Origin: Ranitomeya imitator
Lineage: Eukaryota
NCBI RefSeq assembly: GCF_032444005.1
Contig: NC_091288.1
Span: 215,078,001-215,142,000 of the forward strand
Length of the DNA: 64,000 nucleotides
Direction: 5' to 3'
This document shows, piece after piece, positions 53,888 through 55,459 of the stretch. Below the pieces are notes generated by a model, which had not been told where the DNA came from, searched no databases, and was given only the letters and a program-made list of their open reading frames with translations. Both the position numbers and the translations under genes were made by a program. Every line of letters begins with the position of its first letter. Position 1 is the first letter of the stretch.

Positions 53888-55459
53888 TTATTTTATGATT
53901 TTCATGACACAATTATCATACAGATGTAAAGCGGCATAGAGCGGCTCGGAGAAGGAGGCGGTGAAGGTGTGTAAGTGTCTGATGGAGTCACATACACGAT
54001 AGAAGGACAGACGCCCGGCCTCGTAATCCAGATAGATCCCCACAACCTGCACAGGAGAATCTAATAACATCTGATTATGGATATTGTTATGACTTGCGAA
54101 AAGGTTTTTCTCACAAATGATGGCCCACGACTTCTCATTGAAGCCAATAAAAGTTACGTTTTCATTCGCCTTCCTCTCCAGACTTTCCCCGGCCACCCCT
54201 ATCATCCAACTACTCGCCTGACTCGCGTCCACCTCCCAGTAATGTCTCCCAGAGGAGAAACTACGGGAACCTAGCACTTGACGAGATTTGAACCTTTTGG
54301 GCCCATCGGGTCTGTTCTGTGACGTAGCGGTATGAGAAGCAGATCTGAGATCCTGAGATATAATAATGTTATTCTGAGCCGTGTCTACATCCAGTAATAT
54401 TTCAGATTTCTCCATCACTGGAAACTCTCTCTTCTTTAGATCCATCAGATTATCGGCAAAGTTCCCCAGTCCTCCGTGTAATATCTGTGAGACTAGGCCT
54501 TCATCCACACACGGAGGACCTCTTACATCACCGATGACCTCACAGCTCCCAGAACTGATGTCACCATGGCTTAACTCTTCTTGCAGAAAGGTCAGTGGAT
54601 AAGTGATATTACATAGTCCCTCAAGACTATTCATTTTCTTGGCCAGTTTGTCCACATGAAGCTCTACCGGTTTGACCAGTTCGGTGACTGATAGTAACAC
54701 CTGATTCCTCTGTCTGCAAATTTCTCCCTGGATTCTCTTTTCGAGATCATCCAGCTTCTTCCTGAGATTTGTAAATAGGAGAGCGACTCTGTCGGTGACT
54801 CTGGAAGATTTCTTTCTCTGTTTTGTCCCATGATCCTTTAGATTCTGGATTCTTTTTTCAGCTTCTTCTCTGTTGGATTTAATTTCCTCCAAGACAAATT
54901 GTATTTTCTCCTTCTTCTTCTCAGAGGCCACATCCAGTAGCTCCACATCATGTCCCTTGTGGTCTCCGGCCACCCAGCAGGACACACAGATACAGGCGAC
55001 GTCTATAGGACAGTAGTATTTCAGCATCTCCTTGTGTGTGGAGCATTTTCTTTCCTCCAGGGTATCAGTGGGGTCAACTAAGGTATGTTCTGGTGACTTA
55101 CTGTGTCTGCTTAGGTGTTTTTCACAAAAAGACGCCTCACACTGTAGACATGTTCTTACAGCCGGGGCAGGAGAATCACAGTAAGTACAGAAGATTCTGG
55201 TCTCCTCCATATCAGGCTGAGTAGATGAGAAATGCTCCACTATGTTCCTCAGCTTCCGGTTCTTCTCCAGGGCCGGACGCTCCGGATATTCTGCTCTGCA
55301 GTCAGGACAGGAATACCCTCCAGCCGCCTCCTGTGCATCCAGCACACTCACAATACACGAGCGGCAGAAGTTGTGTCCACATCTCAGGGATACGGGATCT
55401 GTATAGAGGCTCAGGCAGATGGAGCAGTTCAGCTCGTCCCTCAGCTCTGCAGACGCCAT
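53888..55459 (-). CDS. Intronless TRIM E3 ligase (RBBCC-PRY/SPRY), 523 aa; here TRIM-B
   Basis: Start MASAEL at 55459, in the same CCACCACAATG context as the paralogues; the track's upstream extension is probably UTR. All domains intact. Confidence 0.95.
   Translation of the reverse strand: [523 protein letters not shown]

What the first reader, a model, noticed from the sequence alone, without database searches (positions are those of the whole stretch)
53888..55459. TRIM-B is a mosaic: TRIM-A-like for codons 1-153, TRIM-C-like thereafter
Seen: over residues 95-153 (B-box1, linker, start of B-box2) TRIM-B is identical in protein to TRIM-A ([26 protein letters not shown]...[11 protein letters not shown]; one nucleotide difference seen), while TRIM-C differs strongly. 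From about 55000 onward TRIM-B follows TRIM-C ([70 protein letters not shown]) and also shares its 3' flank (about 53560-53880 vs 60520-60840). Inference: gene conversion or unequal crossover swaps catalytic/oligomerisation modules onto different recognition modules.
Basis: partly seen in the sequence, partly recalled or inferred. Interest (0 to 1): 0.7.

Follow-up and report, generated by a model that had tools for sequence, protein, structure and literature searches.

The report
Frog TRIM gene with swapped B-box
One of three neighbouring immune-type TRIM genes of the mimic poison frog carries a 177-base B-box1 segment that matches a distant neighbour while the rest matches a closer one; the mosaic is real, old, made by gene conversion, and an ordinary case for tandem TRIM clusters.

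Summary
In TRIM-B (53888-55459, minus strand) the best breakpoint lies between codons 153 and 154, at window 54998-55001 (chi-square 154; 0 of 2000 permutations reach it).

- **A-like part.** Only codons 95-153 (B-box1 plus linker, 55001-55177) are specifically A-like: 1 difference in 177 nt. Codons 1-94 (RING) are about 98% identical in all three genes and say nothing. The 85 nt before the ATG are of B's own lineage, not A-like.
- **Synonymous divergence.** A-B dS is 0.03 in the cassette and 2.4 in the coiled coil. B-C dS is 1.56 in the cassette and about 0.24 downstream. Selection alone cannot explain this.
- **Age.** The syntenic B orthologues of Ranitomeya variabilis and Phyllobates terribilis have the same junction, so the mosaic predates those genera. 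A few sites point to later A-to-B refreshing.
- **Mechanism.** The A-like part is an internal patch with B-type flanks on both sides. That fits gene conversion, not unequal crossover.
- **Family context.** B-box1 exists as two ancient types in six hyloid frog families. The types are reassorted against coiled-coil and SPRY trees (AU p 1e-59 and 9e-8). The Dendrobates tinctorius B gene is A-like up to nt 1038.

Partial gene conversion is already described in primate and squamate TRIM clusters. This is a new member of a known kind.

The parts
53888..55459 (-). TRIM-B coding sequence (523 codons, no intron in the ORF): RING, B-box1, B-box2, coiled coil, PRY/SPRY
   Evidence: ORF; Pfam domains; this exact protein is in NCBI/UniRef (P0121)
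55460..55544 (-). 85 nt before the ATG of B. Homology among family members starts here. The sequence is of B's own lineage, not A-like.
   Evidence: 4 mismatches to the R. variabilis B orthologue, 16 mismatches plus 6 gap columns to A, 24 plus 15 to C
55178..55459 (-). B nt 1-282 (codons 1-94, RING). Near-identical in A, B, C and other paralogues, so uninformative about the donor.
   Evidence: 97.9% identity for each pair among A, B and C; dS 0.02-0.08 for all paralogue pairs
55001..55177 (-). B nt 283-459 (codons 95-153): type I B-box1 plus B1-B2 linker cassette. This is the A-like patch.
   Evidence: 1 nt difference from A; dS 0.027; dS 1.56 to C
54998..55001 (-). Best-supported breakpoint (between B nt 459 and 462), inside the conserved start of B-box2
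   Evidence: maximum chi-square 154.4, 0 of 2000 permutations reach it; it lies in a conserved block (nt 421-510).
53888..55000 (-). B nt 460-1572: B-box2, coiled coil and PRY/SPRY of the B/C lineage
   Evidence: B-C dS 0.23-0.33 against A-B dS 0.6-2.4. The B clade (three or four species) has 97/94 and 98/99 support.
53592..53887 (-). 3' flank of B, shared with C but not with A; probably 3' UTR
   Evidence: alignment 53592-55471 with 60547-62434, 84.1%; contigs of small runs cover this flank but not the DNA upstream of about 55516.
37801..39372 (-). TRIM-A coding sequence. Its type I cassette is at 38914-39090.
   Evidence: Orthologues P0122 (R. variabilis) and P0123 (P. terribilis).
60845..62422 (-). 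TRIM-C coding sequence. Its type II cassette is at about 61958-62140. C is itself a mosaic (see Noticed in passing).
60547..60844 (-). 3' flank of C, homologous to that of B
41334..54871 (.). Two copies of a 6768-bp tandem duplication (99.985% identical). Its right edge falls at B nt 589, 130 nt 3' of the mosaic junction, so it is a separate and much younger event. It leaves a truncated B copy at 47120-48103.
   Evidence: Absent from R. variabilis, which has a single copy.

Best explanation
TRIM-B is a class-IV TRIM gene of the B/C lineage. Its B-box1/linker cassette (codons 95-153) was replaced by non-crossover interlocus gene conversion with a type I cassette of the kind carried by TRIM-A.

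**Shown**
- The patch is internal: B-type 5' leader, B/C-type B-box2, coiled coil, SPRY and 3' flank.
- It is identical to A at synonymous sites as well.
- Its 3' junction at nt 460 is shared by the syntenic orthologues of R. variabilis and P. terribilis. The mosaic therefore predates the split of those genera.

**Inferred from a few sites**
- The cassette has since been re-homogenised with A within Ranitomeya, and probably again in R. imitator (A as donor).

**Inferred mechanism**
- Conversion tracts start and end in blocks that all paralogues keep nearly identical (RING, start of B-box2, PRY, SPRY core).
- The two B-box1 types (67% identical) are too diverged to convert each other piecemeal, so they move as a cassette.

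The same process operates throughout this frog TRIM family. It keeps the RING uniform and reassorts B-box1 type, coiled coil and SPRY.
For: **Breakpoint.**: 60/3 against 51/257 informative sites; chi-square 154; 0 of 2000 permutations.

**Synonymous divergence.**
- A-B: 0.027 in codons 95-153, 0.62 in 154-200, 2.44 in 201-345, 0.64 in 346-523.
- B-C: 1.56 in the cassette, 0.23-0.33 downstream.

**Internal patch.**: the 85 nt upstream have 4 mismatches to B of R. variabilis and 16 plus a 6-nt gap to A; the 3' flank is shared with C and with B orthologues, not with A.

**Orthology and age.**:
- L003:3120-5212 matches window 55841-53734 at 94%, followed by the A orthologue (L003:8726-14255, 92.5%).
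- L002:9804-12285 matches 55653-53165 at 85%.
these orthologues are type I up to about nt 460 and B-like after it.

**Later refreshing.**
- derived base at nt 395 is shared by A and B of both Ranitomeya species only.
- derived base at nt 315 is shared by A (both species), B of R. imitator and the D. tinctorius B gene, but not B of R. variabilis.
- B of R. imitator has 1 difference from its own A, 2 from A of R. variabilis, and 6 from its own orthologue.

**Recurrence.**: the D. tinctorius gene at the B position has B-type flanks and SPRY but is A-like to nt 1038 (211/16 against 15/105 sites).

**Family-wide.**
- type II B-box1 forms a clade with 100% support and holds members of six hyloid families.
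- 14 type changes on the coiled-coil tree, at least 5 forced by strong branches.
- AU tests reject type II monophyly on coiled coil (p 1e-59) and SPRY (p 9e-8).

**Position of breakpoints.**: they sit at conserved blocks.
Against: - The 5' end of the tract cannot be placed. The RING is uniform in all paralogues, so the patch may be 177 nt or up to about 545 nt.
- Among the 11 genes analysed at nucleotide level, the B-box1 and coiled-coil splits involving B are compatible as unrooted splits. B's own mosaic therefore rests on the roughly 80-fold contrast in synonymous distance, not on topology.
- The case for a fresh A-to-B event in R. imitator rests on singleton sites and one polarised site. 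By synonymous sites alone (1 observed against about 2.6 expected) it is not significant.
- Breakpoints near conserved blocks are partly a detection bias.
- No read or contig was shown bridging the junction in this species. Unitigs end at 54968-54995.
- The idea that divergence between the two types blocks piecemeal conversion is weakened by genes that combine a type II-like start with a type I remainder.
Confidence: 0.8

Rival explanations
1. Polarity reversed. The B/C ancestor carried type I. C and its relatives acquired type II from another paralogue. B is 'mosaic' only by comparison with C, and the A-B near-identity comes from separate homogenisation among type I genes.
For: - Both types occur inside the dendrobatid B/C coiled-coil clade (9 type I, 12 type II).
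- P0004 of R. imitator and the upstream gene of L001 are also type I on C-like backbones.
- Ranoid and myobatrachid relatives have a type I-like B-box1, so type II is the derived form.
Against: - This model still needs an A-B exchange in the cassette (dS 0.03-0.2 against 0.6 or more elsewhere), so B or A is recombinant in either case.
- It needs one more event than the main model.
- The A lineage is type I in Anomaloglossus and Leptodactylus too, which fits A or another type I gene as donor.
Confidence: 0.25
2. Unequal crossover between a type I gene and a C-like gene created B as a chimeric gene with one flank from each parent.
For: - The genes are tandem and in the same orientation.
- The region does rearrange: a 6.8-kb tandem duplication.
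- The 5' limit of the A-like tract is hidden in the uniform RING.
Against: - B's leader and upstream 300 nt are collinear with B of R. variabilis and resemble upstream sequence of C-like genes (P0124, the L001 upstream gene), not A.
- The D. tinctorius B gene likewise has B-type flanks on both sides of a longer A-like tract. That is the signature of patches.
Confidence: 0.08
3. No recombination. Purifying or convergent selection keeps codons 95-153 of A and B alike.
For: B-box1 is a zinc-binding domain, and type I is well conserved across frog families (83-93% protein identity).
Against: - Synonymous sites are identical too: 1 of 37.7 synonymous sites differs, dS 0.027.
- The same gene pair is saturated at synonymous sites 150 codons downstream.
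Confidence: 0.01
4. Assembly artefact: a chimeric consensus of paralogues in a repeat-rich region.
For: - A 99.985% tandem duplication ends inside B.
- Short-read unitigs break at the edge of the shared tract.
Against: The same architecture and junction are present in independent assemblies of R. variabilis, P. terribilis and (with a longer tract) D. tinctorius, at syntenic positions.
Confidence: 0.01

Closest known systems
Young primate chromosome-11 TRIM cluster (Han, Lou and Sawyer 2011, PMC3228819)
   Same: - Tandem or segmentally duplicated RING/B-box/coiled-coil/B30.2 genes.
[quoted passage not shown]
   Different: - There only two branches moved, and conversion was judged not extensive.
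- Here the exchanged unit is a B-box1 cassette with two ancient forms, and reassortment is pervasive.
- The frog genes have uninterrupted ORFs.
Squamate harbiTRIM arrays (bioRxiv 2025, PMC12262214)
   Same: Tandem antiviral-type TRIMs with extensive recurrent recombination or gene conversion, detected by GARD and RDP4. The authors read it as coupling duplication with conversion.
   Different: - Breakpoints reported there are mainly within PRY-SPRY.
- Here the clearest ones bound B-box1, the coiled coil/PRY border and the SPRY core.
- No antiviral activity is known for the frog genes.
Zebrafish NLR-B30.2 family (Howe et al. 2016, PMC4852459)
   Same: Gene conversion acts differently on different domains of one multigene immune family. 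One domain is kept in discrete groups that no longer convert each other, and another is exchanged across groups. This was inferred from domain-wise synonymous divergence.
   Different: - It is a different protein family: NACHT-LRR with a B30.2 exon.
- There the discrete groups lie in the central NACHT domain. Here the discrete types are a 59-codon B-box1 cassette.
Fish finTRIMs (van der Aa et al. 2009, PMC2657112) and the mammalian TRIM6/34/5/22 cluster (Sawyer et al. 2007, PMC2151084)
   Same: Lineage-specific tandem expansions of class-IV TRIMs with conserved N-terminal parts and diversifying B30.2. Gene conversion is acknowledged as a possible confounder.
   Different: - Those families are described mainly through duplication and positive selection (own knowledge for finTRIM; that paper was listed but not read).
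- The TRIM5 locus is said to show limited recombination (statement in PMC12262214).

Membership tests
Class-IV TRIM (RING, B-box, coiled coil, PRY/SPRY) E3 ligase family | N-terminal C3HC4 RING finger | tested here: met
   zf-C3HC4_4 / zf-RING_UBOX, E about 1e-11, residues 12-54 in A, B and C
Class-IV TRIM (RING, B-box, coiled coil, PRY/SPRY) E3 ligase family | B-box2 zinc finger | tested here: met
   PF00643, 33.5-35.5 bits against a cut-off of 24.1, residues about 135-176
Class-IV TRIM (RING, B-box, coiled coil, PRY/SPRY) E3 ligase family | B-box1 zinc finger (present in only some TRIMs) | tested here: inconclusive
   only a sub-threshold ANCHR-like B-box match (E 3e-4, 21 bits against a cut-off of 27) at residues 90-123. 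The Cys/His spacing visible fits the B-box1 pattern as I know it. No structure was predicted.
Class-IV TRIM (RING, B-box, coiled coil, PRY/SPRY) E3 ligase family | Coiled coil after the B-boxes | tested here: inconclusive
   TRIM_CC matches below the curated cut-off (19-26 bits against 30)
Class-IV TRIM (RING, B-box, coiled coil, PRY/SPRY) E3 ligase family | C-terminal PRY and SPRY (B30.2) | tested here: met
   PRY 36-45 bits (cut-off 27.5); SPRY 56-77 bits (cut-off 26.3)
Class-IV TRIM (RING, B-box, coiled coil, PRY/SPRY) E3 ligase family | E3 ubiquitin ligase activity or an antiviral role | not testable with these tools
Source names such as TRIM11-like, TRIM25-like and nuclear factor 7-like are automatic.
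Non-crossover interlocus gene conversion tract | A stretch of near identity between paralogues that includes synonymous sites, set in diverged sequence | tested here: met
   1 difference in 177 nt, dS 0.027, against dS 0.6-2.4 downstream
Non-crossover interlocus gene conversion tract | Both flanks of the acceptor remain of the acceptor's own lineage (a patch, not a flank switch) | tested here: met
   Caveat: between the leader and nt 283 lies the RING, which is uniform in all paralogues.
Non-crossover interlocus gene conversion tract | Donor and acceptor both persist at their loci | tested here: met
   The B-then-A order is conserved in R. variabilis. Adjacent accession numbers in P. terribilis suggest the same order there.
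Non-crossover interlocus gene conversion tract | Segment trees that disagree | tested here: met
   - Family level: AU p 1e-59 and 9e-8.
- The D. tinctorius B gene and C conflict topologically.
- For B of R. imitator itself, the conflict is in clock-like distances only.
Unequal-crossover chimeric gene | Upstream flank from one parent and downstream flank from the other | tested here: not met
   the upstream flank of B is not A-like; it is orthologous to that of B in R. variabilis.

The most novel reading that the evidence does not exclude
B-box1 of this frog TRIM family exists as two discrete cassettes, types I and II. They have been kept side by side in six hyloid families since before those families diverged, which by my own knowledge of frog phylogeny is tens of millions of years. 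The cassettes are combinatorially reassorted by gene conversion onto different coiled-coil and SPRY modules. If the two types differ in function (for example in higher-order assembly or partner choice) and are kept by selection, the cluster would be a germline system that multiplies effector variants by recognition variants.
Probability: 0.25. Interest if true: 0.55.

Novelty: new member of a known kind. Interest (0 to 1): 0.35.

Why it matters
**For annotation and evolutionary analysis.**
- No single tree describes these frog TRIM genes.
- Orthology calls, dN/dS scans and duplication dating must be done segment by segment.
- The automatic names (TRIM7-, 11-, 25-, 39-, 62-like) given to near neighbours are not meaningful.

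**For biology.**
- This is a clean, datable example of partial gene conversion in an amphibian immune-type gene cluster. It comes with orthologues in four poison-frog genomes.
- It shows that the B-box1 cassette, the coiled coil and the SPRY can each be moved between neighbours.
- The two-type B-box1 dimorphism is the only part that may be new. It gives a simple experiment: swap the cassette on one backbone.

Tried and rejected
- **A-like tract extending upstream.** BLAST had suggested A and B share 85 nt before the ATG while C shares 12. Alignment with orthologues showed that all family members are homologous from about -85, and that B's leader is of B's own lineage. The BLAST result was an extension artefact.
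- **Link to the 6.8-kb duplication.** Its edge is at B nt 589, not at the junction (nt 460). It is also absent from R. variabilis. The two events are unrelated.
- **Topological incongruence for B among the 11 nucleotide sequences.** The strong splits of nt 283-459 and nt 460-1035 are compatible as unrooted splits. I therefore did not use an AU test on that set. I relied on synonymous distances and on the family-level protein tests instead.
- **Read-level confirmation of the junction and of expression.**
  - Only Logan contigs were available, and they break at 54968-54995, where the sequence becomes shared with A. No bridging piece was listed.
  - Coverage of the CDS and 3' flank, but not of DNA upstream of about 55516, in runs of only 70-120 million letters suggests transcripts. 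The run type is not on record, so expression is likely but not shown.
- **Statistical proof of a post-speciation A-to-B conversion in R. imitator.** Differences are 1 (to A) against 6 (to the R. variabilis orthologue), but all are singletons. This is suggestive only.
- **Literature on frog TRIM gene conversion.** Nothing specific was found; 'TRIM' mostly hits read trimming. One search failed on a malformed term.

I met no assembly gaps (N) in the window and no contig that I took for human.
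Full report
**What is there.**
- The window comes from the mimic poison frog, Ranitomeya imitator. Its proteins sit on a 226,787,878-bp chromosome record, the same record that carries other R. imitator TRIMs.
- Three uninterrupted ORFs on the minus strand encode RING, B-box1, B-box2, coiled coil and PRY/SPRY proteins. They are A (37801-39372, 523 aa), B (53888-55459, 523 aa) and C (60845-62422, 525 aa).
- In the direction of transcription the order is C, B, A.
- A 6768-bp tandem duplication (41334-48103 and 48102-54871, 99.985% identical) ends inside B and leaves a truncated copy at 47120-48103.

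**Check of the observation.**
- A codon alignment of A, B and C gives four zones in B coordinates.

| B nt | Zone | A-B identity | B-C identity |
|---|---|---|---|
| 1-282 | RING | about 98% | about 98% (A-C also about 98%) |
| 283-459 | B-box1 and linker | 1 difference | 53-70% |
| 460 to about 560 | start of B-box2 | roughly equidistant | roughly equidistant |
| about 560 to the end | coiled coil and PRY/SPRY | 49-68% in the coiled coil and variable SPRY loops, 79-89% in the conserved PRY/SPRY blocks | 77-96% |

- A maximum chi-square scan puts the break between nt 459 and 462, at window 54998-55001. Informative sites are 60 'B=A' and 3 'B=C' on the left, and 51 and 257 on the right. Chi-square is 154.4; the best of 2000 permutations was 19.9.
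- The shared B/C 3' flank (53592-53887 with 60547-60844) is confirmed. A's similarity stops inside its CDS.
- The title needs one correction. Codons 1-94 are as C-like as they are A-like (6 nt differences each), so the specifically A-like part is codons 95-153.

**Selection or recombination.** Nei-Gojobori estimates by segment:

| Pair | Codons 95-153 | 154-200 | 201-345 | 346-523 |
|---|---|---|---|---|
| A-B dS | 0.027 (1 of 37.7 synonymous sites) | 0.62 | 2.44 | 0.64 |
| B-C dS | 1.56 | 0.33 | 0.23 | 0.25 |

- In the RING every pair, including distant paralogues, has dS 0.02-0.08.
It is not met. Selection cannot give an 80-fold contrast at synonymous sites between adjacent parts of one gene pair.

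**Age of the mosaic.**
- The protein search and cluster look-up gave A orthologues in R. variabilis and Phyllobates terribilis. The surrounding DNA was fetched.
- In R. variabilis a 523-codon gene lies 4.9 kb upstream of the A orthologue. Its locus is collinear with B and both flanks (L003:3120-5212 with window 55841-53734, 94%), and the A locus follows (92.5%). The 6.8-kb duplication is absent.
- In P. terribilis, P0003 is collinear with B and its flanks (L002:9804-12285, 85%).
- Both orthologues carry a type I (A-like) B-box1 up to about nt 460 and are B-like after it.
- In the coiled coil and SPRY they form a well-supported clade with B (97/94 and 98/99).
- The junction therefore predates the Ranitomeya/Phyllobates split. 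It is not an event of this genome and not an assembly artefact.

**Conversion, not crossover.**
- Alignment of the upstream regions shows that all family members become alignable at about -85.
- In those 85 nt, B has 4 mismatches to its R. variabilis orthologue, 8 to the D. tinctorius gene at the B position, 16 plus a 6-nt gap to A, and 24 plus 15 gap columns to C.
- Further upstream, B is collinear with its orthologue and resembles upstream DNA of C-like genes, not of A.
- With the 3' flank also of B/C type, the A-like part is an internal patch. It is at least 177 nt. It is at most about 545 nt, because the uniform RING hides its 5' end.

**Continuing exchange between A and B.** All points here come from a few sites.
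- Within nt 283-459, B of R. imitator has 1 difference from its own A, 2 from A of R. variabilis, and 6 from its own orthologue.
- A derived base at nt 395 is shared by A and B of both Ranitomeya species only.
- A derived base at nt 315 is shared by A of both species, B of R. imitator and the D. tinctorius B gene, but not B of R. variabilis.
- A is unchanged between the two species at the sites where the B orthologues differ. If a conversion happened in R. imitator, its direction was therefore A to B.
- These are few sites. By synonymous changes alone the excess similarity is not significant. I rate a post-speciation refresh as likely, not shown.

**A second, independent A-to-B tract.**
- In Dendrobates tinctorius the gene at the B position (P0018, L005) is flanked upstream by sequence matching the C 3' flank and the C-B spacer. 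Downstream it is flanked by B's 3' flank.
- Its leader is B-type and its SPRY groups with B (98/99).
- From the start to nt 1038 it is A-like: 88-100% identity to A by 90-nt window, against 49-71% to B between nt 481 and 1020. Informative sites are 211/16 on the left and 15/105 on the right.
- A has therefore overwritten B at least twice, with different 3' ends.

**The family-wide pattern.**
- Among 56 relatives from six hyloid families, B-box1 falls into two types. They differ in non-ligand residues, in the linker and by a one-codon indel.
- Type II is a clade with 100% support and a long stem, and contains members of all six families. Ranoid and myobatrachid relatives have a type I-like form.
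- On the coiled-coil tree the type label needs 14 changes, at least 5 of them forced by strongly supported branches. The mean for shuffled labels is 17.6. The SPRY tree also needs 14.
- AU tests reject a single type II clade on the coiled coil (p 1e-59) and on the SPRY (p 9e-8).
- Coiled coils cluster by taxon, with both types in each cluster.
- Some genes combine a type II-like first 15-30 nt of the cassette with a type I remainder. Examples are B of P. terribilis and the upstream gene of L001. Breakpoints inside the cassette therefore also occur.
- C is itself composite. It is like P0124 of R. variabilis to about nt 1235 and like B after it (143/37 against 14/49 sites; conflicting clades at 95/98 and 100/99).

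**Mechanism.**
- Shown: the patches, their synonymous identity, their recurrence, and the uniform RING.
- Inferred: homology-dependent repair between tandem, same-orientation paralogues a few kb to tens of kb apart.
- The inferred breakpoints (nt 283, 460, 1038, 1235) fall in or at the edge of blocks that all paralogues keep at 85-100% identity. This placement is partly a detection bias.
- The 67%-identical B-box1 types would resist piecemeal conversion and would mostly move whole.
- The outcome is a constant RING, two B-box1 forms, and lineage-specific coiled coils and SPRYs in changing combinations.
- Whether the two B-box1 forms differ in function is unknown.

**Expression.**
- Contigs of several small public runs (70-120 million letters, three organism labels) cover B's CDS and 3' flank at 95-100% identity. 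They do not cover the DNA upstream of about 55516.
- This looks like transcripts with a short leader, but the run type is not on record.
- Contigs end at 54968-54995, where B becomes identical to A, so none was shown to bridge the junction.

**Comparison with what is known.**
- Partial gene conversion with a breakpoint between RING and B-box2 was reported for young primate TRIM genes (PMC3228819).
- Extensive recombination was reported in squamate harbiTRIM arrays (PMC12262214).
- Domain-specific gene conversion, inferred from domain-wise dS, was reported in zebrafish NLR-B30.2 genes (PMC4852459).
- I found no paper on frog TRIM clusters.
- The finding is thus a well-documented new member of a known kind. 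The two-type B-box1 cassette is the only element that might be new.

**Verdict.** The cause is gene conversion of a B-box1 cassette: old, recurrent, and not a crossover. Interest is modest.

Noticed in passing
L005:10001-11572 (Dendrobates tinctorius, P0018): The gene at the B position has a B-type leader, SPRY and 3' flank but is A-like from the start to nt 1038. This is a second, longer A-to-B conversion tract that also carries the coiled coil.
   Followed up: yes
window 60845-62422 (TRIM-C): C is itself composite.
- Its B-box1 and coiled coil group with P0124/P0010 of R. variabilis.
- Its SPRY from about nt 1235 groups with the B clade, and at protein level with P0007 of P. terribilis.
   Followed up: partly
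window 55178-55459, 39091-39372, 62141-62422 and relatives: The RING region has dS 0.02-0.08 between all paralogues tested, including ones saturated elsewhere. It is 94-100% identical in protein even to distant paralogues of other dendrobatids. This is concerted evolution of the RING across the family. The scan's note s1-295254 covers this.
   Followed up: partly
L006:10001-11698 (R. imitator P0004, same chromosome, another site): A 565-aa paralogue with an in-frame tandem repeat of a 14-residue unit ([14 protein letters not shown], at least four copies) between RING and B-box1. It has a type I cassette on a C-like backbone.
   Followed up: no
window 53888-55000 against L003:3957-5069: Between R. 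imitator and R. variabilis, B's coiled coil has dN about equal to dS (0.047 and 0.048). A's coiled coil has 0.012 and 0.036. B evolves two to three times faster than A. This could be relaxed or positive selection, or small undetected conversions.
   Followed up: no
window 55756-56961, 45400-46600 = 52168-53367, 41777-44502 = 48545-51270: - Long minisatellite arrays flank B. One has a 60-bp period just upstream of B.
- That upstream array is missing from the collinear R. variabilis alignment.
- The arrays give long spurious ORFs on both strands.
   Followed up: no
window 27660-29540 (+), 33098-33757 (-), 13592-14683 (+): - A 626-aa leucine-rich-repeat ORF in a single exon.
- A Tc1/mariner-like transposase remnant.
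- An ORF that looks like the endonuclease part of a non-LTR retrotransposon.
All three were judged from the translations only.
   Followed up: no
window 55094: The single A/B difference inside the shared tract (B nt 366). One contig of run X7 shows the A-gene base here. It could be an A transcript laid on B or a polymorphism.
   Followed up: no
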